Made by a program: the position numbers and the translations under genes
The notes under the pieces: model-generated
Seen by the model: the letters and a program-made list of their open reading frames with translations, nothing else
Told to the model about the DNA's origin: nothing
Databases searched by the model: none
Shown: positions 2,937 through 63,954 of the stretch, piece by piece
How positions within the stretch are numbered: position 1 is the first letter of the stretch
Layout of the letters: each line of letters begins with the position of its first letter
Source of the DNA: Trichosphaerium sp. ATCC 40318
Taxonomy: Eukaryota; Protista; Tubulinea
Reading direction: 5' to 3'
NCBI GenBank assembly: GCA_038496445.1
Contig: JALMLS010000062.1
Span: 310,001 to 374,000, forward strand
Length of the DNA: 64,000 nucleotides

Positions 2937-3635
2937 ATGACGACTAAACGCAAGGTACTCTTTTTTACAGAAATAATAAACGTTTATTCGCCCTAACGCA
3001 TATGCGACTAGCTGACTACGCCAAAAAGCGAACCAACCACTAAAACGAACCTTTTGAGCCTTCCAAGTGATTTACACATTGAAATGGCTGAAACAGACCT
3101 CGAGGTATATCTAAAGTGGCCGTTACTGTCAAAACAGATAGCTCAAATGACGAGGTTCGATAATAAGCTAAAAAAACACAGAAAATGGATTCGACAAAAA
3201 GTCAACAAAGAATCATCGAAAAGACAAATTAAATTACACGCACATTGGAGTCATGGTAAACTTCACGGTGAGCTTAAAACATTCCATGGTAGCGGTCAAT
3301 TGAGTCTACAATTCAAGTACGTTAGAGGTAAAAGAGAAGGAGAGTGTAAGAGCTGGAACAAAGAAGGTCAATTGAAATTTAAGAAATATTATGTCAATGC
3401 AAAAAAGGAAGGTGATTACTTTGAGTGGCATGATAATGGTCAGATGTTTAGACATACTTACTATGTTGATGGTAAGAGGGAAGGAGAACAACATACTTGG
3501 CATGCTAATGGAAAACAGCATATTAAAGTATTTTATAAGCATGATGTTAGACATGGAGAGTTCAAACGTTGGAGTGAAGACGGACAATTAATTAAACAAT
3601 GTAATTTTGTCAATGGTACATCGAACAATAAGTAA
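2937..3635 (+). CDS. F-box-like + MORN-variant repeat protein (copy 2), intron 2955-3011
   Basis: Micro-exon MTTKRK, then GTACTC...CCTAAC...CTAG, then LTTPK...LLSLPSDLHIEMAETD..KWPLLSK and about 5 repeats of 24 aa (WHDNGQ...YVDGKREG). Confidence 0.88.
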
Positions 3636-10195: not shown

Positions 10196-11831
10196 CTAAT
10201 GCCCTGGAGTACCCTCTGCAAGTGCTTTGATACGCCAAACATAGTAAGGTCTATTCTTTACCACGTGACTATTTTTAAAGAACCATAAATATTTGTGCAA
10301 AAACAGAACAATAACTGTACCTTCTGAGCTGCATGATTACATTAGAAAGATCAGAATCCGTGAAATACAACCATTTATCAGGACCAAAGCTTGATTTGAT
10401 ATGTTTAGTTCTTTAAATAGTAGGTTAAGAGTGGTTTACCTGAATCCATCCGGCCAACACCATCGATCGTCTTTTACTAGTGCTGATAATTCTCCTTTGT
10501 TATTCAGTACTGAAATTGCACCATGTTCTACAGCTGTGATGTATACGTTTCCTTCTTTGTCAAGTGTGATACCATCACTTTGAGGTGTTGGACCAAATAA
10601 TTCTACCTAGAAAGAATAAGTATACCTAACAAGTAGTTTACTGAAACGTACTTGTTTATCAAGTTCGTCGTTTGTTAGTTTTTCGTTCAACAAGTGAGAT
10701 ATCTTAATACGGAACATAGATTCATGAGACATTGGAGAGTAGTAAATATACTCTCCGGCATCATCAATACCGATAGAATCAAGCGAAGGGTGCATGCTAA
10801 TGGCATATCAGCACAGAACTTTTAACAGCTGATACTTACTTGTACAATCCGAAAAATTGCATGATATGTCCTTTTGCCTTAAAAAAACACGTGTCAACAT
10901 CACGTGATTATTTTCAAACGTAACAATGTAAGTAATGGGCGTACGTTTATATCATATGGCTTAGCTACTACGGAAGGATGATTTTCAAGAACACGTCTAC
11001 CCTTTTTTGCTTCAATATCATAAACAATAATAGAAGGGCTCAGATTAAATATGCCAATATCAGCGATAAAAATAAACTTTCCGTCATTTGACACTTGGAA
11101 ATCTTGAGTATACGATCCGTACCCAGCAACATCTAAAAGAAAGTTAATCGCGATAAGTAGTAGTCGACATTTGATGATAAGTTTGGTTGGCCGAGTTGAG
11201 ATGATGAAATGATTTCCCAGCTTGTTACCACGAGGGCTTGAATAAACAACTGTAATGTACCTTTTGGAATATCCCAGCGATGTACTAGTTCTTTTGTTTC
11301 ATAATTAAACGCTAAAAGCCTTGGTTGCTTCAATCCATGAAACCCAGTATCTAAGGTCCAAAGTCTATCTTGTCTATCGATACGAAGACTGAAAACGTTA
11401 TCAAAGTAAGGTTCGCCATTACCACGGCTACTCTGCCATTCTTCATTAGGCCAAGGAACAGGCTTGCCATCAATGATTTCAAGCACACGGTGCGTTGGAT
11501 GTCCTAAGAACTCTTGTTAAGGTTTTTTCTCATCTTTTTTGGGCAAAATCAACGAAACTCATTTTGACGCTTCGTGCACGTGATATTTTTAAGACGTACC
11601 TTCTGGGTGGTAGTTAATGAATACTCTACCTTCTTTTGATACAGCAATATTACCAGGCGCTTCGTCAAGTACGGCTACAATCTCTGCTTGTACTTCTTTG
11701 CTTGTTTTTATTGGTTTACCGAGAGGTAACGTAAAAGGCTTCGTAGGGCCTCCATAAATATACTTAAGACCTCCTAACAGTATTGCGAGTGTCAAGAAAA
11801 TAAAACCAATTGTATTCGTTAGGCACGCCAT
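10196..11831 (-). CDS. Yellow / major royal jelly protein family (L-dopachrome tautomerase-related) beta-propeller, multi-exon
   Basis: N-terminal signal/anchor; PGNIAVSKEGRVFINYHP, SLRIDRQDRLWTLDTG, SDGITLDKEGNVYIT, WPDGFSFGPDKWLYFTDSDL; ends PYYVWRIKALAEGTPGH*. Confidence 0.9.
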
Positions 11832-12091: not shown

Positions 12092-12894
12092 TTAATCTAT
12101 GCTATTGTGCTTGATAACGAAACTCTGCTCCAATCGCCCACTACTATCCCATTTCTTGTACTCTCCCTCCATAGTACCTTTAACAACGTGGAAGTATACG
12201 TTCAATGTGCCATTTCGATACCACCTCTTACACACTCCATCGTTTTTGCCTTTTGTAATAGAAGCTGTGCTCTTCCAATTGACCATTGGCGTACCACCTT
12301 TTGTATTCTCCGTGCTGCTCACCGTGAACAAAATAGGATTTTGAAGCTAACTGTCCACTGACGTGCCATGCCTTGTGCACTCCATGAATTTTACCATTGA
12401 CATAATAAAACTGGTTAATCAAGCCACCATCAACATGCCACAGATTGTACTCTCCTTCCATTTGACCATTAATGTAATTAACCGTCCTTAATGGTTTGCC
12501 ATTCATATGAAGCATCTTGTAATCTCCTTCCTGTCTATCATTCATATAATTACACTGAACATTCAAAAGGCCAGTACTGTACCACTTTTTGTACAGCCCA
12601 TGTTTTTTACCATGTCTCCAATTAAACTCTTGATAAACAAATAAAGTACCTTGATTTATTTTTTTTTGTAGCCATTTACCATGTTTGTTTAACTCACTAT
12701 CAAATCTTGTTGTTGTTGCTGTGTATTTCGATAGTAAAGGCCAGTTTTGATAAACAAATTGGTCCATATCCAATAAATATAGGTGTAACTCAACTGGAAG
12801 ATTAAGTAGATGGCAATGCTCGAGGTCCTATTTATTCAAGTGTTAGGCATGAATAATGAGTTTGTATTAGTACCTTATGTATTGATGCCCCCAT
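12092..12894 (-). pseudogene. F-box-like + MORN-variant repeat protein (copy 4), intron 12873-12828 and a +1 frameshift near 12252 (pseudogene or assembly indel)
   Basis: MGASIHK | DLEHCHLLNLPVELHLYLLDMD..NWPLLSK. The repeat register continues SFYYK>GKNDGVCKRWYRNG only if one A of an A4 run is removed. Confidence 0.8.
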
Positions 12895-21077: not shown

Positions 21078-21968
21078 ATGAACGTTAGAGGTCTACTTCA
21101 GCTTCCAGTTGAGCTTCAACTTGATATTGTAGATCTAGACGCTAGTTTACTGTTAAAATGGCCAATTTTATGTAAGAACGCCGCAATAGCGATTAGGTTC
21201 GATCAAAACTTGAATAGACAAGGCAAGTGGGAGAAATACAGTAAAGGAAATCGTATTTTGATAAGGCAAGCTTATTTCAACAAAGGCGTACTTGTCGGAC
21301 AATACAAGGAGTTTTTTGAAGATGGTCAACTGAGAGTCACGTGCTTTTATGACAATTATGGAGAACTACATGGAGAGGTAACAAGGTGGTTTTCTAATGG
21401 TAATATGAGTGAAAGATATAGCTGTATTAGAGGCGAAATAGAAGGAGAATACAAGAGTTGGTATGAAGATGGTCAAAAGAAAATGTATGGGTGTATTATT
21501 GATGGTAAGAGGGAAGGTGAGTTTATATCTTGGAGGCAGTATACAGGTTATGAGGAAGATGCACAATTAAAGCAAGAGAGTTGCTTTTACGTTAATGGAA
21601 AACTAGAAGGAGATCATTTCAGATGGTTTGTTAGTGGCGCTTTGTGTGAGCACAATGTTTATAAGAATAATAAAAGACATGGAGTTTCAAGGGCTTGGGA
21701 CGATATAGGTGTAGGAAGATATCTTGTTGATGAACGTGTATATGTTGATGGTCTGCTAGAAGGACAACATAAGATGTGGCATAGGGGTGGACAACTAAAA
21801 GGAATGTGTTTTTATGTTAAAGGAAGGAAAGAGGGTGAATATGTCTTCTGGGACGAGCATGGCAATACATCAGATTATTTGCGTGAAATAGGTTCAAACA
21901 GGTACTATGAGTTTCATAGTACATGGTGTAGACAAACTGGTACTCTGGACGTATTTCCTTTCAAGTAA
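21078..21968 (+). CDS. F-box-like + MORN-variant repeat protein (copy 5)
   Basis: LLQLPVELQLDIVDLD..KWPILCK..RFDQNLNRQGKW followed by about 8 diverged repeats. Confidence 0.9.
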   Translation: MNVRGLLQLPVELQLDIVDLDASLLLKWPILCKNAAIAIRFDQNLNRQGKWEKYSKGNRILIRQAYFNKGVLVGQYKEFFEDGQLRVTCFYDNYGELHGEVTRWFSNGNMSERYSCIRGEIEGEYKSWYEDGQKKMYGCIIDGKREGEFISWRQYTGYEEDAQLKQESCFYVNGKLEGDHFRWFVSGALCEHNVYKNNKRHGVSRAWDDIGVGRYLVDERVYVDGLLEGQHKMWHRGGQLKGMCFYVKGRKEGEYVFWDEHGNTSDYLREIGSNRYYEFHSTWCRQTGTLDVFPFK

Positions 21969-24070: not shown

Positions 24071-25135
24071 TGCAGTGAGCGTATGTAATAAACATTTTTT
24101 TATCTTTCTAAGAATATGGCAAATTAGTACAAACTTGAGTCTTCGAGTAAGGTTGCTAAAGGTATAGGCACAGCTTACAATGTTGTGGTAGTCGGATTGG
24201 AATTGATCATGGGATAGGAGCTGGTGTAAAAGGGTACGCAGGATGACTTCCTGGCACGCAGGCTAAGTTGGACCTTCTATGGAATTCCCAAACTAGCACA
24301 AAGCGAACATCAGCACGTTATGCAGCTTCTGTAGTGAAAATGAGCGTATAGGTACTGGAGCTACACATACGACTGCAAAGACATTCCACAGAGGGGTTAA
24401 AAGATTCGGTAAAGGCCTAGGAATAGGTAAGTGTGCAAAGCGTCTTTGGTTATCAACATTAAGTTTGCTTGTTCTAAGTGCTTCGTTTACTGGAAGAACT
24501 ATTCATCGTGGTGTTGCAAGGAATTCACTGTATAAAGAAAGGAAACTCAAGAAACGCATAGCAAAGTCTAGAGGTCATCCTGTAAATGAGAATCAAGTAG
24601 CTGCTAAACAGATTGGCAGTAGCTCTGTTCACGGAGCTAAAACAGTTATTTAAGCTTTTGGCAAATCAACAAAAATTGCACAAGATACCTGTGATGCACA
24701 TGTGGGATATGTCGAACATATGTACGTCTTTTCTGAACCTGGTTTCGTATCTAAAGACAAGTATTACATAGACAAGTACATGAGAAAGGCGAAATGACAA
24801 GAAAGAACTGGAATTCTGCAGGTCTGTACGTACTAAACCCTTTCGTATCACGTGTATTTTATGCCAGTTTTAAACTACAAATGACTTATATTGACAAATA
24901 CTGGAAAAAGCTTTGCGATTTTTTTTACCTCATGGCTGAAGCAAAAACAGTTAGTGGTTTAACGCGGATCACTAAAATTTAGTTTAAAGCCTAGTGGTGC
25001 GTAGTCTTATCATTTTTCGTATTTTAACTCGAACCCAGGAATAGTATTCGCTTGCGAGACCAGAAGGCCATTGTAGAAAAAAAAGTAGTATTCGCGGCCA
25101 CGAAAAAAAGGTTTTCACAGAAAAAGAAAAGTAAA

Positions 25136-27025
25136 ATGCAAACAAAGAAAAAATTTGACTTTGGCATTTTGTATGATAAACAGCCTCCTACGCTTTCTCT
25201 CCTTGATATTCCTAAGGAGATTCAGCAATATATTTGCTCTTTCAATGCTGAAGCGTTCACAAAGTTCCATATGTTATCAATGAGAGCTGCTGTTAACACA
25301 CATTTCAACAATAGCCTACAACGAAACGGAAAATGGCTGAGGTGGTACAAGACCGGGCAACTTAATCAACAAAATATGTGGGTAAACGGTAAGTTAAACG
25401 GCATTTTTTCAATATGGCACAAAAACAGGCAACTTTCTGCGGAGTCCATGTGGGTAGATGGAAAAATACAAGGTGAAATCAAACAATATTATGAGAATGG
25501 ACAACTTTCAGGGCAATTCATGTGGGTTGATGGTAAACGACAAGGCCATGCCAAAGAATGGTATAAGAATGGTCAACTTAAAGTGATGGGTATGTGGGCT
25601 GATAATAAACCTAACCACGAGTTTAAAATGTGGGACGAGACAGGTCAACTTCGCTCACAGATCATGTGGAATGCTGGTGTAAAAAACGGTACTAACAAAG
25701 AGTGGGATGAGAACGGACAACTAAGAATACTAAGTAAATGGCTTAATGGTAAACAAATTGGTGTGGCCAAAGAATGGTATGACGACGGTCAACTGATGAC
25801 ACAAACAACATGGAAGGATAATAAATTAAATGGTGAAGCAAGAGTGTGGCATAGGAATGGGCAAATTAAAGAACAAACTACGTGGGTTGATGGTAAAGTG
25901 CATGGTGAAGGCAAAACATGGTATCCAAATGGACAGCTTAAGGAACAATACATAAAGATTTATGGTAAGCTAAACAAAGAGGGTAAACAGTGGTATCAGA
26001 ATGGCCAACCTCAAACTCAAACAAGGTGGTTTGATAGTACAAGAAATGGTAATCACAAAGAGTGGTATGAAAGTGGACAAATTCATTTCTTTAGCAAGTG
26101 GGTTGATGATAAACGAAATGGCGAATCTAAAGAATGGTTTGAAAACGGGCAACTTAAGACACTAGCCATGTGGGTTGATGGTAAAGTGCATGGCGAATCC
26201 AAAGAATGGTTTGAAAATGGGCAACTTAAGGAACATTGTATGTGGGTTGATGGTAAACGAAATGGCGCGCTAGCAGAATGGTATGATACTGGAGAACTTT
26301 TTGCTGAATTTATGTTTGTTGATGGTGAGCCAAATGGCGAATATAAGGAGTGGTATAAAAATGGTAAACCCAAGATACAACAGGCATGGGTAATGGGTAA
26401 AAAAACGGGAAAGAGGAAGACATGGTTTGACAATGGACAGATCAAACTTGAATGTAATATGATTGATAGAAAGCTACAAGGTGAAGTCAACGAATGGTAT
26501 GAAAATGGACAACTTAATAAACAAAGTATGTGGGCTGGTGATGAAAAACATGGTGAATGCAAGGCATGGTTTGAGAATGGAAATATTAAGGAGCAAAGTA
26601 TGTGGGCTGGTGGTAAAAGACATGGTGAGTCCAAAACATGGTATCAAAATGGACAACTTGAGTCACAAGCAATGTGGATCAATGGTAAAAAACACGGTCT
26701 GGCCAAAGCGTGGCATGATAATGGACAACTTAGCATAGAATGTATCTGGATTAATGGTAAACGAGAAGGTGAGCTGAAAGCATGGCATGTAAGTGGACAA
26801 CTTGAAGTACAATCAATGTGGGTCAACGGTAAACAACACGGTCAGGCCAAAGCGTGGCATGATAATGGACAACTTGAGACACAATCAATGTGGAGTGATT
26901 CCAAATTAAACGGTGAGGCCATAAGATGGTATGAGAACGGGCAAATTCAAATACAATGTATGTTTAATAATGGTGAAGAAGTTGGAGAGGCAAAAGAGTG
27001 GCACGAAAATGGTGAACGTAAATAG
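25136..27025 (+). CDS. F-box-like + MORN-variant repeat protein (copy 6), about 23 repeats
   Basis: LLDIPKEIQQYICSFNAEAFTKFHMLS.. (closest to copy 3), then uninterrupted 24-aa repeats WYENGQL....WVDGK..GE.KE. Confidence 0.92.
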   Translation: MQTKKKFDFGILYDKQPPTLSLLDIPKEIQQYICSFNAEAFTKFHMLSMRAAVNTHFNNSLQRNGKWLRWYKTGQLNQQNMWVNGKLNGIFSIWHKNRQLSAESMWVDGKIQGEIKQYYENGQLSGQFMWVDGKRQGHAKEWYKNGQLKVMGMWADNKPNHEFKMWDETGQLRSQIMWNAGVKNGTNKEWDENGQLRILSKWLNGKQIGVAKEWYDDGQLMTQTTWKDNKLNGEARVWHRNGQIKEQTTWVDGKVHGEGKTWYPNGQLKEQYIKIYGKLNKEGKQWYQNGQPQTQTRWFDSTRNGNHKEWYESGQIHFFSKWVDDKRNGESKEWFENGQLKTLAMWVDGKVHGESKEWFENGQLKEHCMWVDGKRNGALAEWYDTGELFAEFMFVDGEPNGEYKEWYKNGKPKIQQAWVMGKKTGKRKTWFDNGQIKLECNMIDRKLQGEVNEWYENGQLNKQSMWAGDEKHGECKAWFENGNIKEQSMWAGGKRHGESKTWYQNGQLESQAMWINGKKHGLAKAWHDNGQLSIECIWINGKREGELKAWHVSGQLEVQSMWVNGKQHGQAKAWHDNGQLETQSMWSDSKLNGEAIRWYENGQIQIQCMFNNGEEVGEAKEWHENGERK

Positions 27026-46145: not shown

Positions 46146-49100
46146 TCAATTTCGTTCAGGGTGGACTAGTAGATGTATCGCAAAGTTAAACTGGGTAGCC
46201 TTATTCTTTAAACTCTCCTTAATAAGTCCTAGAAAGAATTGAGAAGCCTCTTGATCTGTTTTATCAAGTGCAAGGGCTGAACGAAGGTAATTAATGTCTG
46301 ATTCTTGAGACAACTCAGCCATTCCTGTACCGACCATCTAAAAAAATTAGAGTTAATGACACATAACAACAGCAAAATAGGAGTAAAAATTCTGTAAAAT
46401 ATTTGTGCGTTGACTAGTTATCAGGGAGAAATTGCATGAGTGAGAGAAAGATTAGTTTTAAGAAAAGCATGAAATTGATTGTTTCTTTTATGTACCATTG
46501 AGAATAAGTTTATAAATATATGAGCGTTACGTCTTAATATGTTATAAGCTTTACAACATAATGCACAAAATAGCTTATATAGATTAGATTCAGTTCCACC
46601 TAAACGAAAAAAAAATAAGTAAGAAACCCCGAATTTACAGCAATTCTTCATCAACAAACCACATTGAATCATGCTCGTTTCAACGTTGATTATCCTAATT
46701 ATATCTTTTAACGTACCCATTACATATGCCATATCAGGTGTAAATACAAAAGGCGCTCTATCTCTTGAAATACCAGCAAACTTTTCTGAATTTCCCAAAA
46801 ACCGACCAAAATCAATATGAAACATATGACCTTTCTTTGTACACATAATATTATCATTATGTCTATCACCAATACCTAGAACATATGTCGCTACACAATA
46901 TCCAGCACAACTTCTGACAAAGTCCTGAACAGCTAGACGGAAATCTTCCTCTAAAGCAGAAAAAAGTAAGAAAAAAATCGTATGATTTAGGAGCTTGCTC
47001 CAAACACGCTATCAGCTGGCATACCTTTTGGGTTATGTTTAGCAAGCCACCACCGTATAGGTTTTTCGCTAAAAGCACCTGTGACACCACCATACTGTTT
47101 TTGTATATCTGCAGCAGTCTCGGACTCGAGAACAATCTCAATCATACCAACATTATCACCTGTTTCAATACATTGATATGCTGACATTTTCAAGTCCAAT
47201 CCATCTTTAAGCCACAACTAAAACATTATTATCTCAGCTTGTTGTAAACAAAAACAATAAAAGGAGCTTAGTAGATCAAACTCGTTCTTATAACTATTTT
47301 GAAAGTTGAACTGTTTTGGTACCTTATCCATTATACGGAACATTTGTAATGTCAATTGATCTTGAAGCAAATCATCTCCGACCTTAAACAACGCATATAA
47401 CGGTGCGCCCATAGCATCATTATTGGCAAAAACAAGCCACAAAGGAAACTAGGAATAAGTATTAGAAATTCGCTGATTTTTGTGCGCGTGATAACACGTT
47501 GTAAGGAGGCGTACCGTTTTAGAATCTAGGTGCTTGCATTTATCTATTATGAACTCCTTACCTTGCCATGTTGGCTTGACTGGTATTTGGAACTTTGCTG
47601 GCAGCTTCATACGAGTTAATTCATTATTTAGGAATTGTTTTCGTTTAGAGTCTTTGCACTCAATGACACCACTAGCCGCTAAACAACGTCAGAAAACTAG
47701 AAAAAAAAAAGGGAAGAAAAAAAAAGAAAACAATAAGCATCACCAAATAGTACCTCTATATAAACTTGTGTATACTTCAGTCTGAGTCATTAGATCCAAT
47801 AGGTATCCTGAGCAGTATCTACATTGTTTTAGGTAATAGATAAAATACACTAGACAAATACCTCAAAAACATTTCAAGTACAGCAGAAAATCGTTCCCGA
47901 TAAATTTCGTATTTGAGGCAAGAACGCATGTACCAGAAAAAGTAATGGCCAACAGACGTTACGTTCGTAATAGCACGCATGATTAAAAACCTAGCAAGTG
48001 TAGAATCATGGTGCATCTCATGCTTGAGTGCCTTAAAAAAACGTAAACAAAAACGATTGCATAGTTGACAACTCTTACTTGAACAAGCTGCAAAAGAATG
48101 TCTGAAAGCTCTTCATCTGTTATTCTATGAAGCTGTTTCACAGCGTAACTTCTTATATGTTTATCTTTGAATCTATGGTTAAGAAGCTCCAAAGCATTAA
48201 GTGCTGGAATGTCAGGCCATTCATGTATCAAATTGTAGCATTCCTGAAAAAAAAAGTTAGTACTGGAATAAAAAACTGATTGGTTCGTTTGTTATCGCTC
48301 AAAATCATTAAACGTACCTCTATATCACCAGGTCTATGCCAAGGTACACTTGCCATCACTTTAGGAAGAGATATTGGAATGGTCTACATACATTAATATT
48401 AAGAAATAATTGAATGTTGTGGATTTTGTTGAATTCTACCTTGCAATGCTCGCGATAATGCCAAATGAGTTCCTTTTCATCTGCTGACAAATGAAACATT
48501 GGACCTTTATTAATGATTTTTGCAATCTCATCTGTAACATCACGTGGTGGAGTAGAAAGTCTACGATTTGTCCTTCTATGTGCTAAAAAAAATATATTAG
48601 TATGCCAAATCTTTCACAAGTATACACCAACACGTGCCTTTATACGTAAAATTTGGGAAAGCAACTGGACTTTCTAAAATCTCTATTTCAAATACAACAT
48701 CTGGACCATTTCCCGTTTGTAAATGCGATGCTACAATTCAAGTATTAGAATCAACCCTAAAAGGATACAAGAAAAAAACGCGAAAATCTGAAATAGATCT
48801 GTTTATCGTTTTGTTGCTTTACGATGGTGTAGTATAGTACTGCTGTTTTGATGTTATATAAAAACGTACCCATATGATCTGGTGGAGAATCTACAATACA
48901 AGGAATAATATGACAACCACGTCGTATAAATCCTCTAAAGTCATACAAGTTGAAATTGAACCAACCAATAACTACTTCTTTTTTGCCATAAACAGCTAAT
49001 ACTTGGCAATGCAATACAGAAGCCCATGGTACAACATTATAATAACTCAATATTTTCCAACTATTACACTGTATCAATACATAATAACTGGAAGATAAAC

Positions 49101-52100: not shown

Positions 52101-52939
52101 TGAACTTAGAAGGCGAGAGATCACGTATCTTGTACTTTCCAGGAGCCTTCCCAGAGTCACCTTTAGATCCTACTGTTGTTTTCTCTTTATAAGAAGAACT
52201 ATCAGAAGATCCTTCTGTCCTTGCGGGCCTCAATTCGCCATTGACTTTACCTATGGGAAAAAAAAATTACAAAAGTCTGCCAACAAAATAGGTTAAAAAA
52301 GCCTTCACATACACAAGTTTTTTTGTAGTATTTTTATGGTATACTGTATTGTAAAAAAATATGAATTAATCTTTTATCACGTGATATCAAGAGACAAATA
52401 ACAAAAGATGAAAAAAAAAAAAAAAATGTACAACGTGATTAATAAATCCTAAACGGACCTTTGCTTTGGCCTCCGCGCTTCTTGGGTTTATCTAATTTAT
52501 GCGTATTGTTATTGGTTGAGCGTGGTTCAAAAATCCCCATATTCAATATAGTAGGTGGATCCCGTGCATTCGTCTCATCCCACGTGAGTTTTCGTTGTTT
52601 CTCTTCATTGACGGGCAAAGAAGCCTGTAAAGGATTACTGAGCGAACGATGCTTTCTCACAGGTTCTCCTCCATTCTCATCTACTTTTTCTTCTGCAGAT
52701 AAACTGAGGTTGATTAAAAAATCATGGTCTTGGTCTAGTTGTTGTAACAGAGAGTCAATCTCACTTATAGTAGTCTCTGGTGTTATCGTCACATCTTGCG
52801 AAGTACGAACGTGTCCTCTTTTTCTTTTAAATACGTTTGCTAGGTTACTACTTGCATGCCCATTAGCAGACGATGAATCGCCATTTAATTTATTTGTTTC
52901 GTTGTAATTTTTTTCCTTTTGTTGTTTAATATCCGTCAT
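46146..52939 (-). CDS. Class I-type phosphatidylinositol 3-kinase catalytic subunit with a long N-terminal extension, many introns
   Basis: FKVGDDLLQDQLTLQMFRIMD, LGIGDRHNDNIM, FHIDFGRFLGN, RDRAPFVFTPDM, helical domain IRSYAVKQL...LLQLVQAL, and upstream C2 and Ras-binding-like exons. Confidence 0.95.
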
Positions 52940-53838
52940 AGTCTATACCACGTGCGCGCTATTATGACTATCGATAAAGCGGTGTCGACATGGTCTTAAT
53001 GCGAACTAGAACAATAAAATGGGGAGTCAATTATGTTCTAATTAGTTTCGGTTTCCACGCCGTGTTAACGCGATACTTCAATGTACACGTACAAGGCGTG
53101 AAAGTTTTAGAAAAACGTGAAGATAATTTATCGATCACGTGACCTTTGAAACAGCTATCTCCTCTTAGAAGTTAGACAATGTTATTTCAATACCATAAAA
53201 TGCAATGGGGGTCCATACAGACAAGTATAGGAGAATTGCACCTTTATTTTACAAGCGAGTTTTTTTCACGTTTTCGGACTTTTTGAACTTTGTTGGTCAC
53301 GTACTCACATCCATTGCATCTGTGGGTGTAGTAAATTCTTCAAGAGTACGCGTGGCGAGGAGTAAAAAGTCATTGAAACCTGATACGCTCGTGCGCAGCA
53401 TTTTAATGTCATTTGAAACGAATTCGCTGTATATCGTTAGATTAATGCGTAATTCAGCGTAAGGCGTACACTACAAGAGTTGAATTTTCTACTGTTAGCG
53501 TTTTTGATATTTTTTCTTGTTTAAGCTCTTCATCAGGTATCAGAGAGTTTAGAGTGTAAGTTGCCCATGTTGGGGTTGGGTATTCAACACGTAACGTACT
53601 AAAAATCATATTTAATGGTACTGGAGCAATATTTGTGCGTGTTCGTACTATTTATACATTGTATGAGATTCTTCTGTGTCCAAAGCGCGTTTGCTTCCAG
53701 ATACTTCCATGCACCAGCTCAACACTGTCGCTTTATGTTGTTACAGGCGTTAGAACCGTTTAATACAATTTATGCTGACTTGACAGTTAAATGCAAAATA
53801 CTCCAATTTTCATTATTTTTTACAGTAGGATACTAATA

Positions 53839-56800
53839 ATGAAGCGTAAGCGTCAAGCCGCGAAACCGCAACAACAGAAAAAGCAAAGGCGCGAAACAAC
53901 AAAGAACGATCGAAAACCGCTAGAATTGTTGGGGACGCATGGATTTTTGACATTAGATACAAATACAAGGGATTTACGCCGTCATTCGTGTTTTAAAGTC
54001 AAGTTTCCAAAAATCAACGATAAACCCACCACAATAACTATAAAACGAGAAGAATGGCGATTTGAGACATTTGTAATTTTATTTCCACCAAAAGTAGCAA
54101 AATCGAACAAAACTATTAACTGGAGCGATTTATCGTTAGATTGTGGTCAGGTACGGCATTTTGATCTTGACACGCAACTTTTTATGCATTTGATCAATAA
54201 AACCTCCAACAACGCTGACAAACGCATCTGCAGGCGGGTCAAAGGAAAATAGAGCTAGAATCAATTTCTACAGAATCTGTAATTCAAATGCTGGGCGCCC
54301 AAGGCGCTCAAATCACTTCTCAATTGACTCAGTACCGAACGTTATTATTTGACACTACTTTGACGTGTCCATGGACGCAACAGTGGCGTTCAGTGTATTT
54401 TTTTCCAATATATAGACGGTACATAACTTTTTTTTTTGTTGGTCTTGTTCCTTATTACTTTGTTCAGTGGAGAGGATGTATTGTCTCTTCCTCGTTTACT
54501 AGATTATTATAAATCAAATGGTGGTTGCAGTGTATCCGTGGATAGATTATTACAGTCTACAACTAGTAGCAGAGTAAGCCCATTTTTTTGTGTTATGATT
54601 GCATGTTCTTGTTTGTAAATATCACGTGTAGAGTCGGAGTGCTGTCCAAAATAATGATTTCAATGGAATGATTGTGCGACATCCTAGCCGTCCATTACCT
54701 TTTCGTGTAGATTCTATAACGGGTGGAAACGTAAGTCGTCAGTATTAGTATTTGCTATTCAAACAGCAACCTCTTTTTTTGAAAATCTTTTTTGTTAGAA
54801 TACGTGCTGTTATGTCTTACGTTATGTTTAGGGCTCTCTTCATATAATACATAAATCCTATAAATTTGTACGATACATGCCAGCAAAAGAATCACATGCA
54901 CTCAGCGTTGATGGCACAACATTATCAAAAATTTCAAGTTTCGAAAAAGTTACAGAATCAGAAGAAAACGTTGATGAAGACTCAAAGTACCCAACTACTA
55001 CCACAAGTACAACTGGATTCTATGCAAATGTATTACAGGTACGTTAGGCATCATATATATCAATAAAATGTGACCAACATTAACCAAAATTCTTCTGCAA
55101 CAGATGGCGCTTATGATGCCAGTAATTATTTATGAAATGCAAATCTGGATTGCTTTGGGTGATGTTGGTCGTAAGATGTTTAAATCGGTTAATGATAGCG
55201 CTGTAGAACGTTCTGGTCTTAGAAGGATTCTAGCGCATCCGGCATTAACACGTATATACCATCACTATGCCGAGCATGTTCGGATTTTATCTTCTGCTGT
55301 TGGTCATCCACCTTTTTTTTCAAGCGGACAAACAAAGACTAGACGTGTTGGGTATATAAGACAGCTTACTAATGAGCATTTCAGTCCTGTTGATGAGTTT
55401 CTTCAATCTATTGTACTATCAAACCAACGATTAGAGTTTCTTGGTGATGCTGTGTTAAGGTTTGATTCATCTCGTGCTTTTATGAATCTATTCGATGAAA
55501 GTGAAGGTACAGTTGTTTTTTGAAAATCGTTCACTTGTGTCTTTGCACAACGCTCTTTTACTATGATTATTTACATTCAAACAATGTAAATATTTATTTT
55601 ATAGTATTTAAAATTGTGCATATGCCTTTCAGGGGCACTAAAGTTTATAACTTTGAGTTGCAAGTTGATGTTTTTTGTTGTTTTGTTTGTGTTAAATAAT
55701 TTCTTTACAGGGTGGATGACAAAGATGAGGTCGTTTGTTTCAAGTAATATAACACTTGGTGTTCTTGGTCAAGAGAATTTTGATTTATCCAAAATATTAA
55801 TACATAAAGAAGACGACTTGTTCACAAAAGGTAAAAAAAACAAACAAATTTTCTTGTTTTGTTCGTATTGTTGTTATTTTTTATCGTGCACTGAAAACAT
55901 CCATCTTACATCTATGCACTGCCTTTATCCTCGAAAAATCAATATTAGCTTTTATTTTTCTGTGCACTGTACTCTAGAACGAATGACTTTCTTTTTTTTT
56001 TCTTTTTTTTGTCAAGTGTATTTGTACATTAACACAACTCTGTGTAGAATCACGTCATGCTTTTTCTGTTATAGCAGATGTTATAGAAGCTGCTATTGGT
56101 TGTCTATACCTTGAAAAAGGCTTTGATGCTGCTACATTTTTCATTGCAAATCTTTTATTTTACGATGCAAAAGATAAACAACATTACCTTGATTTATGGC
56201 ATAAGTCTCCCGAATCTCTTTTTGATGGCGAATCTGATAGGTACGGATATAACATATTATCCAATAAGTATACACAATACTATTAAACGTCACATAAGCT
56301 AAATGAAAGCGTTCTAAGAAACAAAGAGCACAAAACTTTTTACCATGCCTTAAACAGTTAGTTGTTTAAGTCATAAACTTATTTTGGTGTTTAGGCACAT
56401 GATAGAGGATTCGAATCTTTATCGCCATTTCACATACCTTGAATCTATAACTGGAGTTAAATTTAATCAAATAAAGCTACTTATAGCAGCTTTTACAAAA
56501 CTACCAGGAGCTGACAATGAAACTGATCGTGGTACAGCAAGACAAAGACTTGAATTCTTTGGTGATTCAATACTCGAAATGGCTACATGTAAATACATCT
56601 ATGAGCAGTTTCCTATGGCTACAGAAGGTCAATTAACGGTAAGAACCCATAATCGATATCACGTGTTCACTGTGAACTAACTTTAACTAACAGACGATGA
56701 AGATTACAATTGTAAATAATGATAACTTGGCTGCCTTAGCAAGGTCTCTAGGGTTTTGCCATTTCTTCCGTTCTACTATACTACAATCTTTGAGCGATGG

Positions 56801-57072
56801 AGAGTCTGTATTCAAGCAGATAAGTAAGCTACTTGCTGATACTCTAGAGGCATGGCTAGGCGCTATATTTTATGATCAAGGCTTTGAACGTGCAGGTATG
56901 TTTGTTTCAATTTTTATGTTTTTTTTCAATTTTTATAAAAATCGTCTTTGTCATTGTGCACTACTACTCCGAGCTTGGATTTGCCCGCCGCTTATGTTTA
57001 TATTTAGAACTTGTTATTCGGACAATTCTTGAAGGTAGTAAGCATAAATTGGCTAAGATAGCTGAATATTAA
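53839..57072 (+). CDS. Drosha-like ribonuclease III (central domain + two RNase III domains, no evident dsRBD), multi-exon
   Basis: NQRLEFLGDAVL..ADVIEAAIGCLYLE and RQRLEFFGDSIL..ADTLEAWLGAIFYDQG; bipartite NLS; linker and central-domain segments resemble animal Drosha. Confidence 0.85.
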
Positions 57073-57161
57073 CCTTGAATAAAACCAAAAAACATTGTAC
57101 ACAATTTTTTTACGTTTGCAGTTTCAAAGTTGACTACGAAATGTTTATTAGAGTTGTACTC

Positions 57162-60100
57162 TCAGAGTATGCCATACAATATTGTTAAAAGAGTGAATAA
57201 GAGAGTATAGTATGGTACTCTGTATGATGCACTTTGTGAAAGTTCTGTATCGGTTGCCCGAGAGACAGTATTAGGTTCAGCAATCACAACACCCTAATGT
57301 TAGACAGTTAATTACAGCATCGATTAATACACGTACAGTGACTAGTATATCCTGGTCTGCAAGGGTAGATATTGTTTCCTGTACTGCTGATTGGTCATCT
57401 AAATAAGAACTAACAGTAGGCGCCAAATTTCCATTTACTCCTATTTGTGCAATATATTTAAGAACACATGTTCAAAAAAACCCTCGAAAAAGTTGAAAAT
57501 AGCATTTCAATACCTGTAGTAATTGTAACAGAAACAGTTGTACTTGTTTGTCTCTTAGAAGTTGTACTTGGTCGTTGACTAACTGTAACATCAGTTAAAT
57601 TAACATTTAATACTGTAGCTACTACAGTCCCAATAGCGCTAAGGTCGCTAGCAGGAACAGGGAATGGATCAGAAAGTATAAACTCAATTGTAACCTCTAA
57701 CAATCAAAATGTCAATAAATCACGTGTACAAAAGTAGAGGTTCATACCGTCAGTGACACACTCTGGACTAGTGCTTGAGAATGTTACAACGCCCGCACCA
57801 AGCGTCCAAGAGCTCTGTTGGCCATCAAAATTATATCGGAATGGTTGGTTTGAAGGAAAGAAGGCAGCACTTCCTTCAAATAGGGTTGGTACTATTGAAG
57901 TATCCAAAGGTGTTGGTGTTATACTGTTGCTTGATCCGTAGCAAATGTCTACAGATGACAACTACCATCTTTTAGTTGTTTTTGTATTGTATCTATGAAG
58001 TACGTACAGTTGTATCCCATCCAAGGATGGCGGTATAATTATCTGGTTCATTTATAATGATACAATCCAACCGTGGTTGAATCTTTTGAGATGTAATTAA
58101 TGTCTGGTAGAAAAGAGAATGCCAACGTACATTCGGGATTGTTGCTGGTGGACAATTTTGTGCGATTGGTTCAAGTGTAGGAACAACAGTTGGTGCAGTT
58201 GTAGTTGGAGAAGCAGTTGTTGTTGGCGAAATTGTTGATGGCGACGCTGTTGTTGGAGCAGCTGTTGTTGGTGAAACTGTTGATGGCGACGCTGTTGTTG
58301 GAGCAGTTGTTGTTGGTGAAACTGTTGTTGGCAAAGCTGTTGTTGGAGCAGTTGTTGGTGCGTTTGTTGTTGGTGCAGTTGGTACTATCACAATTAGGAT
58401 CAACAATTTCTTATGTTACACGTACAATCACAAGTAAAAATACCAAAAGAAGGTGTAAAAACACTTGCATAGATAGTATTGCTGCTGTCTTGTGTGACAA
58501 CAATTAATTGACATTGGCTTTTACTAAATAAAGCCTCTATGTTAATAAGATCATTAGTCCCTACAAGTGATTCTGTTATATTTGAATCAGTTGCTCTAAA
58601 ACCGACAACACCAGTATCAAGTGCTTTGCCAACAAGGACAAATTCTGAGATTGTAGAGCTGCCAACACCGACAGGCTTGACTATTGTCAAATTTGTGCTG
58701 ACTAGCCCCAAATTCACAGTAGTGAAGTCAGAAAAGCATGTGAAATTATGTCTTTGTTCTATACTGTCGCCAGTAGTTGTAGCGTATGTATACAAGTTTT
58801 GTGTATCATCGTTGAAAGCAATACTGATAGTTTCAAGCTCAAGAGCAACTATAGACGCTAGTTCATCCAATGGCTAACTCAAAATATCAAAAAACAAACA
58901 AACATGTAGTTCAAATTAGCTCTAACGTACCCTTGAATTATTGCTGTAAAAGAACAACTTAATATCAAAACCTAGCATCTGGGCCTGAACTAAGCACCCT
59001 GGTTCAACTTGTACAAGGGATGAAAACTTTTTGTCATCCAATTCACTATCAGTTACTAACAATAAAAGGATAAGACACAAAGACATCCTATTGTATTTGA
59101 CGGTACCATTAAATGTCTCAACTGGGTCTCTATCACTTGCAATAGAGTAAAGGTAACTAATTGTGGAATTACGAGCATATACAAGGAAGTCACTGCCAAC
59201 TAAAGAAAAAACAAAGTTAAACTTTTGTTGTACTTGGATTGACCTATCACGCGCCTTGAAATGCATTAAATATACCAACAGAATCGCTTAATGTACCCAC
59301 ATCAATAGTAGTAAAATTTTTAACAAAATCCTATCCGTAGCTGGGTTAACATTGGTTGAAACTTGTTTTTCTTTGACAGAAGAAAAAAACAGGAATAATA
59401 AAGTTGAAAGTACATTATCAATTGTAGAAAAGTGATAGAAATTGTATTGCCACTTCTCAGAGAAACTTGAGTAATAAAACGCTGGAAACTCGTCTCCATT
59501 AAACTCGGGAATAACAATCTCTTCAGCGCCTTGAATAAAAATAGGTTCATAAGTGGGGCCTTCAGCAAGCAAGCCTACACAAAAAATGTAAGTATTTAAC
59601 GAACAAGGTCTTGTCTATATGTTGATATCCACCCCCACACGGCCTTTAATTGCATGTTAGCTATGTGCTACTAGTGTATGCGTTTCAGGGCGTTTCTACT
59701 TTGCGGCAAAAGCCGAATATTGTGCGAGTTTCCTGTCATTTTTTGGCGTGTTTACAAAGAAAACGAGGTTTTAGTTGTTTCCTCTCCCTCACAATGCCCT
59801 TGAAACGCATACGAATAGTCACACTTGCCTCTCCTACGCAAGTAAAGGCCATACAGAGCTGAAACGTGAAAGTGTATCTACGTGCCAGCTGGTTCTGTAA
59901 TGAAAATACTCGATCCTGTTGAGATACCTTCACCGGCGAAGAACGCTAGTTCTGGTGAGTAGAACGGCAAATAACGCGCGTACCAGTCTGAACGGTGAGA
60001 ACGTATACTTGTTGCCCGTTTACCGTGGCTTGTATTATATTAGGGTTGGTGTGCGTAGTAGAGCCCCCTGGTAAATCAATAGTGGTAAAAGTATCTAGGT

Positions 60101-63240: not shown

Positions 63241-63954
63241 CTAGGTGTTAATAACAACCAAGAGCGTTTTCTCGTTTAAAACGTTGACATTGGCTGCTTT
63301 AAGAGCTTCTATGGCCTCTTCTGTCACTTGGTTACATTCATAGAGATTAATTGTATGTACACCTTTTAGCGCCTGTATGCCCTCGTCTGTTACATTTCTG
63401 CAATAGCTGACGTCAATGGTGTGAACCCCAGCGGCGATTGCTTTGAGCCCTTCATCTGTAACTGCAGTGAATGTTAGATCAATAGTGTGAACACCTTTTA
63501 GGGCTTTGATCCCTTCATCTGTAACTGAAGTAGTAGAAAGGTTAATTGTATGAACACCTTTCAACGCTTTAACACCTTCGTCTGTAACGGAAGTATTATA
63601 AAGATCAATGAAGTGAACACCAGCAAGCGCTTTAATACCTTCATCTGTAATGTTAGTACATAAACGAAGGCTAATTGAGTGAACGCCTTTGAGTGCTTTG
63701 AGGCCTTCATCGGTAACTGTAGTGGACTCAATATCAATAGTGCGAACTCCAGCAAGCGCTTTAAGTCCTTCGTCTGTTACCTTATCTGCATCATAAACAC
63801 TAATGGACTGAACACCCGCAGATGCAATAGCCTTTAGATCATCATCGTCCATTTTAGATGTATAGCCGTATGGTGTTCTAATGTGCTTACAACCAGCTAG
63901 TAGCGAGTGTAGATTTTCCAATTCGAGGCATATCTGGACTACGGTATTGTTCAT
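63241..63954 (-). CDS. Leucine-rich repeat protein (AMN1/F-box-LRR-like, 22-24-aa units); probably the last exon of a gene extending beyond the window
   Basis: About 8 units GVHTIxLxxTxVTDEGxKALx. The frame is open upstream to an acceptor-like TTCCAG near 63985. Confidence 0.9.
   Translation of the reverse strand: MNNTVVQICLELENLHSLLAGCKHIRTPYGYTSKMDDDDLKAIASAGVQSISVYDADKVTDEGLKALAGVRTIDIESTTVTDEGLKALKGVHSISLRLCTNITDEGIKALAGVHFIDLYNTSVTDEGVKALKGVHTINLSTTSVTDEGIKALKGVHTIDLTFTAVTDEGLKAIAAGVHTIDVSYCRNVTDEGIQALKGVHTINLYECNQVTEEAIEALKAANVNVLNEKTLLVVINT

What the first reader, a model, noticed from the sequence alone, without database searches (positions are those of the whole stretch)
53839..57072. 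Drosha-type (not Dicer-type) RNase III in a protist-like genome, apparently lacking the C-terminal dsRBD
Seen: two RNase III domains with intact acidic signature residues, a bipartite NLS, no helicase or obvious PAZ, and a stop shortly after the second RNase III domain. From my recollection of animal Drosha, resemblance extends beyond the catalytic cores: KPTTITIKREEWRFETF (cf. RPTVIEYDDHEYIFEGF), MIVRHPSRPLPFRVD (cf. MIVTNPGTKPSSVRID), the insert after AHPA in the first domain, and DRHMIEDSNLYRHFTYLESITGVKFNQIKLLIAAFT (cf. DRQLIETSPVLQKLTEFEEAIGVIFTHVRLLARAFT). Established: Drosha/Microprocessor is mainly known from animals and close unicellular relatives. Inference: if the host is not a holozoan, this bears on the age of Microprocessor-type hairpin processing.
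Basis: partly seen in the sequence, partly recalled or inferred. Interest (0 to 1): 0.8.

Follow-up and report, generated by a model that had tools for sequence, protein, structure and literature searches.

The report
Drosha-like RNA cutter in an amoeba
This amoeba-type genome has an intact gene for an RNA-cutting enzyme of the Drosha kind (the enzyme that starts microRNA production in animals) without its usual RNA-gripping tail; similar genes in other amoebae suggest the enzyme type is older than animals.

Summary
An 11-exon, all GT-AG gene at 53839-57072 (+) encodes a 711-aa protein. It has a basic N-terminal NLS-like stretch and two RNase III domains with all eight catalytic acids. It has no helicase, no Pfam-detectable PAZ, and a stop right after the second RNase III domain. 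No dsRBD is detectable anywhere in the 64-kb window.

It is Drosha-type, not Dicer-type:
- Human Drosha is the best solved-structure match (4e-14, against 2e-5 for Dicer).
- Residues 61-349 match an animal Drosha central-domain profile (HHalign 95%, E 3e-8); Dicer-like controls do not.
- RIIIDa carries the Drosha-specific insertion of about 60 aa (the "Bump helix" region).
- A 406-column tree places it in one clade with animal Drosha and amoebozoan Drosha-like proteins (100/97).

It is a long branch, so orthologue and old paralogue cannot be told apart.

Acanthamoeba ACA1_291000 and a Nematostelium protein belong to the same clade, the Acanthamoeba hit was tabulated in 2026, and a Drosha-like enzyme was characterised in Plasmodiophora in 2026. 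What is new here is a dsRBD-less variant.

The host (Trichosphaerium, from earlier scan notes) and expression were not verified. An earlier scan note on other DNA of this genome predicts a Drosha partner; that is untested.

The parts
53839..57072 (+). Whole coding region of the Drosha-like gene. The 11 exons are 53839-54150, 54234-54418, 54468-54573, 54632-54730, 54832-55038, 55104-55506, 55711-55830, 56048-56240, 56395-56638, 56694-56895 and 57008-57072 (including the stop). The product is 711 aa.
   Evidence: Frame reading and splice-site assembly, all introns GT-AG, 49-217 nt. The product is colinear with Drosha and Drosha-like proteins across every junction.
53842..53892 (+). Basic N-terminal stretch (residues 2-18) that fits a bipartite nuclear localisation signal
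   Evidence: Direct reading: KR, a 10-residue spacer, then KKQRR. Localisation was not tested.
54019..55241 (+). Drosha-type central domain, residues 61-349 (platform, PAZ-like part, connector helix), spread over exons 1-6
   Evidence: HHalign against a profile of 25 animal Drosha central domains: probability 95.2%, E 2.7e-8, 269 columns. PAZ-type Dicer-like and fungal Dicer controls score 2.7% or less, and amoebozoan Drosha-like proteins 98-99.9%. BLASTP with animal Droshas aligns from query residue 38-57 onward.
55170..56175 (+). RNase III domain a (residues 326-520, exons 6-8). The signature is at 55422-55454. Catalytic codons: E414 at 55434-55436, D418 at 55446-55448, D488 at 56077-56079, E491 at 56086-56088.
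   Evidence: Pfam Ribonuclease_3 and Ribonucleas_3_3 on exon pieces. Residues read.
55245..55421 (+). Drosha-specific insertion in RIIIDa (residues 351-409). It includes a segment at 55338-55382 that aligns with the Bump-helix region of animal Drosha.
   Evidence: Insertion length is 61 aa here. It is 57-97 aa in animal Drosha, 42-77 aa in amoebozoan Drosha-like proteins, 13 aa in PAZ-type Dicer-likes and 8-11 aa in fungal and other Dicers. Helical structure was not tested.
56176..56464 (+). Inter-domain linker with the DRH-x-I-E motif shared with Drosha and Drosha-like proteins (residues 521-565)
   Evidence: The PDB phmmer alignment to human Drosha runs through this segment. Multiple alignment.
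56465..57069 (+). RNase III domain b (residues 566-711), ending the protein. Catalytic codons: E595 at 56552-56554, D599 at 56564-56566, D672 at 56838-56840, E675 at 56847-56849.
   Evidence: Pfam. Human Drosha scores 4e-14 against 2e-5 for Dicer with exon 9. Residues read.
57073..57457 (.). Short spacer to the convergent Thr/Pro-rich gene on the minus strand. No dsRBD-coding exon was found here.
   Evidence: tblastn with 17 dsRBD-bearing relatives. Home-built dsRBD HMMs on all frames. Pfam on the one candidate exon gave nothing.

Best explanation
This is a real, intact gene of the host amoeba for a member of the Drosha / Drosha-like clade of RNase III enzymes.

What the sequence shows:
- a Drosha-type central domain;
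- a first RNase III domain carrying the Drosha-specific insertion;
- a second RNase III domain;
- all eight metal-binding acids;
- a basic N-terminus of nuclear-localisation type;
- no double-stranded-RNA-binding domain of its own.

What is inferred from the established mechanism of Drosha and Dicer: the two RNase III domains pair within one chain into a single processing centre. That centre cuts both strands of an RNA stem and leaves a 2-nt 3' overhang. The central domain and the insertion would position the cut relative to the base of the stem, as in human Drosha.

A more speculative inference: because the enzyme lacks its own dsRBD, RNA grip would be supplied in trans by a dsRBD partner (DGCR8/Pasha-like or RbdB/HYL1-like), and the enzyme would act in the nucleus on hairpin or other structured transcripts.

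My odds: clade membership about 0.85; an active nuclear dsRNA endonuclease about 0.7; partner-dependent hairpin processing about 0.4.

In evolutionary terms it is either a fast-evolving orthologue of the amoebozoan Drosha-like proteins (Acanthamoeba ACA1_291000, Nematostelium) that lost its PAZ signature and dsRBD, or an older paralogue.
For: - Solved structures: PDB phmmer with exon 9 gives human Drosha 3.7e-14 to 8.6e-14 and the best Dicer 2.1e-5.
- BLASTP: the best hits are Drosha-like or Drosha proteins (P0007 at 1e-57). Alignments to animal Droshas start at query residue 38-57.
- HMM bit scores over central domain to RIIIDb: amoebozoan Drosha-like 245, animal Drosha 224.5, PAZ-type Dicer-like 195, fungal Dicer 85.
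- Central domain: HHalign 95.2%, E 2.7e-8 against the animal Drosha profile and E 0.32 against the PAZ-type Dicer-like profile. Controls behave as expected.
- RIIIDa insertion: 61 aa, with shared motifs.
- Trees: sister to (amoebozoan Drosha-like + animal Drosha) with 92/89 on 335 columns. The clade has 100/97 on 406 columns. The AU test of grouping with amoebozoan PAZ-type Dicer-likes gives p 0.040.
- Integrity: 11 exons, canonical splice sites and intact catalytic residues.
- Precedents for doing without an own dsRBD: the dsRBD of Dictyostelium DrnB is dispensable when RbdB is present, and Giardia Dicer has none (PMC5056781).
Against: - No RNA evidence: no run was listed, so splicing, the 3' end and expression are unconfirmed.
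- The branch is very long (1.5-1.7 changes per column). On RNase III columns alone the AU test does not reject grouping with PAZ-type Dicer-likes (p 0.069), and it weakly rejects a clade with the amoebozoan Drosha-like proteins (p 0.027).
- The C-x3-H zinc motif of the Drosha central domain (the GCPRFH type, kept in Acanthamoeba, Nematostelium and P0007) is not conserved here, and the CxC...H site is absent.
- Human Drosha needs its own dsRBD (cited in PMC5056781), so a dsRBD-less form may work differently or not at all.
- The tree lacks ichthyosporean Drosha, Plasmodiophora PbDRL, Dictyostelium DrnA/B, animal Dicers and plant DCLs.
- No partner gene is in the window.
Confidence: 0.65

Rival explanations
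1. It is a divergent member of the small PAZ-type Dicer-like family of Amoebozoa and Heterolobosea (PAZ, two RNase III domains and a dsRBD, e.g. Nematostelium P0005 and Thecamoeba P0030). It would have lost its PAZ signature and dsRBD. Its Drosha-like traits would then be convergent or retained from a common ancestor.
For: - That family is the next-nearest group on every tree.
- Its HMM still scores 195 bits on the RNase III core.
- The highest identity in the trimmed RNase III alignment is to P0005, at 34%.
- The AU test on RNase III columns alone does not reject the grouping (p 0.069).
Against: - Members of that family lack the RIIIDa insertion (13 aa against 61 aa here).
- Their N-terminal profile does not match the query (E 0.32), while the Drosha central-domain profile does (E 2.7e-8).
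- With the connector included, the query sits in the Drosha/Drosha-like clade at 100/97, and the AU test gives p 0.040 against this rival.
Confidence: 0.08
2. It is a decaying or re-purposed paralogue: either a pseudogene in the making, or a copy that no longer works as a hairpin-measuring nuclease. The loss of the dsRBD, the zinc ligands and the PAZ signature would be marks of relaxed constraint.
For: - The longest branch in every tree.
- The zinc motif is not conserved.
- No dsRBD.
- No transcript evidence.
- No relative above 48% identity on the 81 residues searched, among 1.84 billion representatives.
- Earlier scan notes list several other RNase III genes in this genome, some half-dead.
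Against: - The reading frame stays open through 11 exons, and all ten introns have GT-AG borders.
- All eight catalytic acids are kept.
- Alignment is colinear with relatives over about 650 residues without frame breaks.
Confidence: 0.12
3. The protein is the same, but the job is different. It would not be a Microprocessor-like enzyme. It could work alone as the cell's small-RNA-producing nuclease, as reported for Plasmodiophora PbDRL, or in nuclear pre-rRNA or snoRNA processing, the role of class-2 RNase III (Rnt1) in fungi.
For: - PbDRL cuts long dsRNA by itself and did not bind the dsRBD proteins that were tested (PMC13547706).
- DGCR8 was not found in Acanthamoeba although it has the Drosha-like gene (PMC13315211).
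- No dsRBD gene lies in this window.
Against: - This genome is reported by earlier scan notes to hold several Dicer-type genes, so a stand-in for Dicer is not needed.
- An earlier first-reader note (s1-404459) claims a conserved Drosha-binding tail elsewhere in this genome. That note is untested.
Confidence: 0.3
4. The gene is foreign to the amoeba: contamination from an animal, or a recent transfer from an animal or a giant virus.
For: - The published Trichosphaerium genome is reported to hold many giant-virus-derived genes (PMC10521059).
- The PAZ-like stretch resembles animal Drosha more than amoebozoan Drosha-like proteins do.
Against: - It shares at most about 33% identity with any Drosha.
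- It branches outside both animals and amoebozoan Drosha-like proteins.
- It has ten short introns and the same G+C (about 0.35-0.37) as the rest of the 64-kb window.
- It lies between amoeba-type genes.
Confidence: 0.03

Closest known systems
Animal Drosha (class 3 RNase III, catalytic subunit of the Microprocessor; human structures 5B16, 6V5B, 6LXD)
   Same: - Central-domain homology over about 270 columns.
- The RIIIDa insertion with a Bump-helix-like segment.
- The DRH-x-I-E linker motif and tandem RNase III domains with the same 181-residue spacing of signatures.
- No helicase and no Pfam-detectable PAZ.
- A basic N-terminus of NLS type.
- The best match among solved structures.
   Different: - No C-terminal dsRBD.
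- No proline-rich or RS-rich N-terminal region (711 aa against about 1370 aa).
- Zinc ligands not conserved.
- Aspartate rather than the animal-specific asparagine in the second RIIIDa motif (PMC4791657).
- It branches outside the animal clade.
- No partner and no substrate is known.
Amoebozoan Drosha-like proteins: Acanthamoeba castellanii ACA1_291000 / XP_004368077 (805 aa), Nematostelium gracile EP01118_P017027 (1058 aa), and metatranscriptome proteins P0007, P0016, P0127
   Same: - Same supergroup, if the host is Trichosphaerium.
- The highest HMM score (245 bits) and the best BLAST hit (P0007).
- The RIIIDa insertion.
- A Drosha-type central domain.
- The same clade, sister to animal Drosha.
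   Different: - Those proteins keep a Pfam-detectable PAZ and a dsRBD and the GC-x-RFH zinc motif. The query has none of these.
- The AU test weakly rejects a clade of the query with them (p 0.027), which may be a long-branch effect.
- They are essentially undescribed. The Acanthamoeba protein appears only as a table entry hitting human Drosha at 2e-78 (PMC13315211).
Plasmodiophora brassicae PbDRL (Drosha-like, Rhizaria; PMC13547706)
   Same: A non-holozoan protist enzyme reported to cluster with Drosha and to carry the Bump helix. It shows that Drosha-type enzymes exist outside animals.
   Different: PbDRL has a dsRBD and is the only RNase III of its kind in a genome without Dicer. Here several Dicer-type genes are reported in the genome. 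I could not obtain its sequence, so it is not in my trees.
Dictyostelium DrnB with RbdB (the amoebozoan 'microprocessor'; PMC4894637, PMC5056781)
   Same: A nuclear, helicase-less tandem RNase III enzyme in an amoebozoan that works with a separate dsRBD protein. The enzyme's own dsRBD is dispensable, which is a functional precedent for a dsRBD-less enzyme.
   Different: DrnB has an N-terminal dsRBD and is reported to cluster with Dicers, not Drosha (PMC5056781). It was not among the 150 best representatives for my query and is not in my trees.
Giardia Dicer
   Same: A minimal tandem RNase III enzyme without helicase and without dsRBD that is nevertheless active (cited in PMC5056781).
   Different: It has a true PAZ ruler and is a Dicer. 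It scores only E 0.93 against exon 9.

Membership tests
Drosha (class 3 RNase III) | Two RNase III domains in tandem with intact catalytic acids | tested here: met
   Pfam on exon pieces. E414, D418, D488, E491 and E595, D599, D672, E675 are intact.
Drosha (class 3 RNase III) | Drosha-type central domain (platform, PAZ-like, connector) in place of helicase, DUF283 and true PAZ | tested here: met
   HHalign 95.2%, E 2.7e-8 over 269 columns against an animal Drosha profile. Dicer-like controls score 2.7% or less. Fold not tested.
Drosha (class 3 RNase III) | Insertion in RIIIDa that holds the Bump helix | tested here: met
   A 61-aa insertion at the same place, with shared motifs. Dicers have 8-13 aa there. 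Whether it forms the helix was not tested.
Drosha (class 3 RNase III) | C-terminal dsRBD | tested here: not met
   The stop comes 36 residues after the last catalytic glutamate. No dsRBD by Pfam, tblastn or home-built HMMs downstream or anywhere in the window.
Drosha (class 3 RNase III) | Zinc-binding residues of the central domain (CxC...H, and the C-x3-H of the GCPRFH motif) | tested here: not met
   In the alignment, the first site is absent and the second is replaced by TCPW...YFFPIY. The second site is kept in Acanthamoeba, Nematostelium and P0007.
Drosha (class 3 RNase III) | Groups with Drosha to the exclusion of Dicers | tested here: met
   The clade of query, amoebozoan Drosha-like and animal Drosha has 100/97 on 406 columns and 92/89 on 335 columns. 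The query lies outside animal Drosha proper. Ichthyosporean Drosha and canonical animal and plant Dicers were not sampled.
Drosha (class 3 RNase III) | Works with DGCR8/Pasha on pri-miRNA hairpins in the nucleus | not testable with these tools
No dsRBD gene in the window.
Amoebozoan Drosha-like proteins (ACA1_291000 type) | Drosha-type platform together with a Pfam-detectable PAZ | tested here: inconclusive
   The platform matches. No PAZ hit on exon pieces. The amoebozoan HMM aligns only from residue 293. The whole spliced protein could not be submitted to Pfam.
Amoebozoan Drosha-like proteins (ACA1_291000 type) | One clade with the named members | tested here: inconclusive
   It gives the highest HMM score and the best BLAST hit, but the AU test gives p 0.027 against the clade. 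A long-branch artefact is possible.
Dicer / Dicer-like (class 4 RNase III) | Helicase and/or a true PAZ domain upstream of the RNase III pair | tested here: not met
   No helicase or PAZ by Pfam. The protein is only 711 aa. The N-terminal profile of PAZ-type Dicer-likes gives E 0.32.
Dicer / Dicer-like (class 4 RNase III) | Groups with Dicers in RNase III trees | tested here: not met
   Separated from fungal and other Dicers by a 100/99 branch. The fungal Dicer HMM scores 85 bits against 225-245 for Drosha-type HMMs.

The most novel reading that the evidence does not exclude
The amoeba has a complete two-part Microprocessor: this dsRBD-less Drosha-clade nuclease plus a separately encoded DGCR8/Pasha-like partner that supplies all the RNA grip.

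Drosha-like proteins also occur in Acanthamoeba (Discosea) and Nematostelium (Evosea). Together with this one, in what would be a tubulinean amoeba, that would put Microprocessor-type hairpin processing back at least to the common ancestor of Amoebozoa and animals. The PAZ-bearing amoebozoan forms would then be the intermediate between Dicer and Drosha.
Probability: 0.18. Interest if true: 0.85.

Novelty: new variant of a known kind. Interest (0 to 1): 0.58.

Why it matters
The textbook view is that Drosha arose in animals. The 2018 revision (PMC6206976) moved that to early Holozoa and said that an older origin would need Microprocessor proteins in other lineages.

This gene, and the amoebozoan relatives that surfaced while testing it, form a well-supported sister group to animal Drosha. 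They share its central domain and its RIIIDa insertion. Most of them still carry a recognisable PAZ and a dsRBD.

That has two consequences:
- It dates the Drosha lineage to at least the Amoebozoa-Opisthokonta ancestor. It may be older, given the Plasmodiophora enzyme.
- It gives living intermediates for the Dicer-to-Drosha transition.

The Trichosphaerium protein adds a form that has shed the dsRBD altogether. That makes it a natural test of what the central domain and the RNase III pair can do without it.

The question is now directly testable in culturable amoebae. Acanthamoeba has both the gene and reported miRNAs (PMC11014262).

Tried and rejected
1. A possible extra 3' exon (57122-57207) looked to me like the first helix and strand of a dsRBD. 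It would be reachable from an alternative donor inside exon 11. Pfam found nothing and a dsRBD HMM built from 34 relatives scored it below noise, so I rejected it.
2. RNA evidence: the look-up of sequencing runs (kind rna) listed no run. Read laying could therefore not be used, and the single search is spent. A 'dna' query would at least have named the organism.
3. Exon 1 alone against solved structures found no Drosha. The central domain is visible only to profile methods.
4. Host identification through exact look-up of two neighbouring single-exon ORFs found nothing on record. The PI3K-like exon is too short for the length-restricted word search, so I did not search it.
5. A word search with the central domain of the Nematostelium protein found only itself. 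Searches with P0007 and P0016 were swamped by animal Droshas. The breadth of the family among protists therefore remains unmeasured.
6. Structure prediction and fold search of the 711-aa protein were not done. A spliced protein has no reference in these tools, and I did not type it in.
7. The first dsRBD HMM was built from a loose motif and was poor. I rebuilt it and got the same negative result.
Full report
**The gene**

The region is eukaryotic and intron-rich. Reading the three forward frames of 53700-57400 and joining open segments at GT-AG sites gives one consistent model. It has 11 exons, runs from the ATG at 53839 to the stop at 57070-57072, and has introns of 49-217 nt (mean 110). The product is 711 aa.

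The model is colinear with Drosha and Drosha-like proteins across every exon junction, with no frame break or missing block. Upstream lies a divergently oriented ORF (52439-52939, minus strand). Downstream lies a convergent Thr/Pro-rich gene that ends near 57458. The gene therefore fills its intergenic space.

G+C is 0.35-0.37, like the rest of the window.

**The observation**

- Pfam finds RNase III on the pieces of exons 6, 8, 9 and 10, and nothing else.
- The eight catalytic acids are intact: E414, D418, D488, E491 in RIIIDa and E595, D599, D672, E675 in RIIIDb.
- Residues 2-18 fit the classical bipartite NLS pattern (direct reading).
- The protein ends 36 residues after the last catalytic glutamate, where relatives continue into a linker and a dsRBD.

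**Drosha or Dicer?**

Five lines of evidence agree.

1. Solved structures. With exon 9 alone (81 aa), human Drosha scores 3.7e-14 and the best Dicer 2.1e-5. The Drosha alignment runs through the linker that precedes RIIIDb.
2. Exhaustive HMMER search. The same piece, searched against 1.84 billion representatives, found 570 relatives and none above 48% identity. So neither this gene nor a close orthologue is in that library. BLASTP of the whole model against the retrieved proteins puts Drosha-type proteins first (P0007, 1e-57). With several animal Droshas the alignment starts at query residue 38-57, far upstream of the RNase III domains.
3. HMM scores. HMMs built from the central domain to the end of RIIIDb score 245 bits (amoebozoan Drosha-like), 224.5 (animal Drosha), 195 (PAZ-type Dicer-like) and 85 (fungal Dicer).
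4. Central domain. Residues 61-349 match a profile of 25 animal Drosha central domains with HHalign probability 95.2%, E 2.7e-8, over 269 columns. They do not match the N-terminal profile of PAZ-type Dicer-likes (E 0.32). As controls, the same Drosha profile gives 98-99.9% for amoebozoan Drosha-like proteins and at most 2.7% for three Dicer-likes and a fungal Dicer.
5. RIIIDa insertion. Between the THPS-type histidine and the RIIIDa signature the query has 61 residues. Animal Drosha has 57-97 (median 65), amoebozoan Drosha-like proteins 42-77, PAZ-type Dicer-likes 13, and fungal and other Dicers 8-11. The inserted segment shares motifs with the Drosha insertion that holds the Bump helix. My tree alignments did not use this insertion.

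**Phylogeny**

On 335 columns of the RNase III pair (53 proteins, IQ-TREE, LG+C20), the query is sister to a clade of amoebozoan Drosha-like plus animal Drosha. That clade has 100/97 support, and its union with the query has 92/89.

The query's branch is very long, and the AU tests on these columns are weak:
- a clade with the amoebozoan Drosha-like proteins: p 0.027;
- a clade with the amoebozoan PAZ-type Dicer-likes: p 0.069.

Adding the connector helix (406 columns, 49 proteins) gives 100/97 for the clade of query, amoebozoan Drosha-like and animal Drosha. The AU test then gives p 0.040 against the Dicer-like grouping.

The query stays outside both subgroups, so fast-evolving orthologue and old paralogue cannot be separated. 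The trees lack ichthyosporean Drosha, Plasmodiophora PbDRL, Dictyostelium DrnA/B, and animal and plant Dicers, because I had no way to fetch them.

**The dsRBD**

- tblastn with 17 dsRBD-bearing relatives finds the RNase III exons and nothing beyond 57072.
- A dsRBD HMM built from 34 relatives finds nothing in 56850-59500 on either strand, nor in any frame of the whole window.
- One stretch that looked to me like the start of a dsRBD (57122-57207) fails both Pfam and the HMM.

As far as the DNA shows, the enzyme has no dsRBD. This needs transcript confirmation, which I could not get because no RNA run was listed.

**Relatives and host**

Look-ups of the best hits show that the clade nearest to animal Drosha holds:
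- Acanthamoeba castellanii XP_004368077 (ACA1_291000, 805 aa);
- Nematostelium gracile EP01118_P017027 (1058 aa);
- three metatranscriptome proteins.

Two of them scanned with Pfam (Nematostelium P0168 and metatranscriptome P0007) carry a PAZ and a dsRBD. In the family I also see the Drosha platform, the GC-x-RFH zinc motif and the RIIIDa insertion. They look like intermediates between Dicer and Drosha.

The next group out is a family of small PAZ-type Dicer-likes from Amoebozoa (Nematostelium, Soliformovum, Protostelium, Thecamoeba). A related family from Heterolobosea (Pharyngomonas, Willaertia) lies beside it.

Earlier scan notes call the host an amoeba, one of them Trichosphaerium. I did not verify this. 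The window's G+C and short, frequent introns agree with the published Trichosphaerium genome: 37.7% G+C, mean intron 75 bp, 8.7 introns per gene (PMC10521059). That paper does not mention Dicer or Drosha.

If the host is Trichosphaerium (Tubulinea), Drosha-like genes occur in all three main amoebozoan branches.

**What is known**

- Brate et al. 2018 (PMC6206976) found Drosha and Pasha in Ichthyosporea and placed Drosha's origin early in Holozoa. They noted that an older origin would need such proteins elsewhere.
- A 2026 paper characterised PbDRL in Plasmodiophora. It clusters with Drosha and has a Bump helix and a dsRBD. It is required for small RNAs and works without the dsRBD partners that were tested (PMC13547706).
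- A 2026 review table lists ACA1_291000 as hitting human Drosha at 2e-78 against 5e-12 for Dicer, and reports no DGCR8 in Acanthamoeba (PMC13315211).
- Amoebozoan miRNA work counts these genes as Dicers (PMC11014262).
- The dsRBD of Dictyostelium DrnB is dispensable when RbdB is present. Human Drosha needs its dsRBD, and Giardia Dicer has none (PMC5056781).
- I found no paper that describes an amoebozoan Drosha clade or a dsRBD-less Drosha-type enzyme. The library searched is limited to open-access papers and preprints.

**How it most likely works**

- Shown: the parts list given above.
- Inferred from the established mechanism of the family: the two RNase III domains form one processing centre that cuts both strands of a stem, with the central domain and insertion setting the cut site from the stem base.
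- Speculative: RNA binding in trans by a dsRBD partner, and nuclear hairpin substrates. An earlier first-reader note on other DNA of this genome (s1-404459) claims a conserved Drosha-binding tail. If real, it would fit a partner. I could not test it.
- Alternatives on function: stand-alone small-RNA production as in PbDRL, or rRNA/snoRNA processing. Relaxed constraint is a real possibility, given the long branch and the lost zinc ligands.

**Verdict**

The gene is a new, dsRBD-less variant within a Drosha-type lineage that is wider and older than usually stated, but whose presence outside Holozoa has begun to be reported. Interest is moderate to high for small-RNA evolution. It is limited by the lack of transcript, partner and activity data, and by the unverified host.

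Noticed in passing
Proteins P0168, P0284, P0007, P0016, P0127 (not in the window): Amoebozoan Drosha-like proteins (Nematostelium, Acanthamoeba ACA1_291000 and three metatranscriptome proteins) form a 99/90 clade that is sister to animal Drosha (100/97). P0168 and P0007 keep a Pfam PAZ and a dsRBD. In the family I also see the Drosha central domain, the GC-x-RFH zinc motif and the RIIIDa insertion. They look like a Dicer-to-Drosha intermediate, and I found no description of them as a family.
   Followed up: partly
P0284 (Acanthamoeba XP_004368077), residues about 380-440: The public gene model looks mis-spliced just before RIIIDa. An Arg/Gly-rich stretch replaces the connector helix and the insertion, leaving 12 aa where relatives have 42-77 aa.
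   Followed up: no
window 1543-2292(-), 3012-3632(+), 6666-7826(+), 12231-12827(-), 21078-21968(+), 25052-27025(+): A cluster of at least six paralogous ORFs. Pfam finds MORN_2 repeats in the four that I scanned. All six share an N-terminal motif of the type L-x-L-P-x-E-L that resembles an F-box. This looks like a locally expanded family.
   Followed up: partly
window 46712-46957 (-): An exon encoding the catalytic loop of a class I/II-type phosphoinositide 3-kinase (GIGDRHNDNIM... HIDFG). It is part of a larger minus-strand gene at about 44-50 kb.
   Followed up: no
window 57458-58870 (-): A convergent gene with a long Thr/Pro/Ala-rich, mucin-like repeat (PTT/APTT units) and no Pfam match. 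Its 3' end lies about 390 bp from the stop of the Drosha-like gene.
   Followed up: no
window 63241-63954 (-): An ORF with leucine-rich repeats (LRR_6, 2e-22). It also has a weaker match to the catalytic domain of D-isomer 2-hydroxyacid dehydrogenases, which is an odd pairing.
   Followed up: no
window 11136-11516 (-): By eye, this exon resembles the major royal jelly / yellow protein family (motif ...RLWTLDTG...). Not tested.
   Followed up: no
Tree: The small PAZ-type Dicer-likes of Amoebozoa and Heterolobosea sit with the Drosha-type clade, on the opposite side of a 100/99 branch from fungal and other long Dicers. This suggests that the Drosha lineage arose from this kind of minimal Dicer. 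Animal and plant Dicers were not sampled.
   Followed up: no
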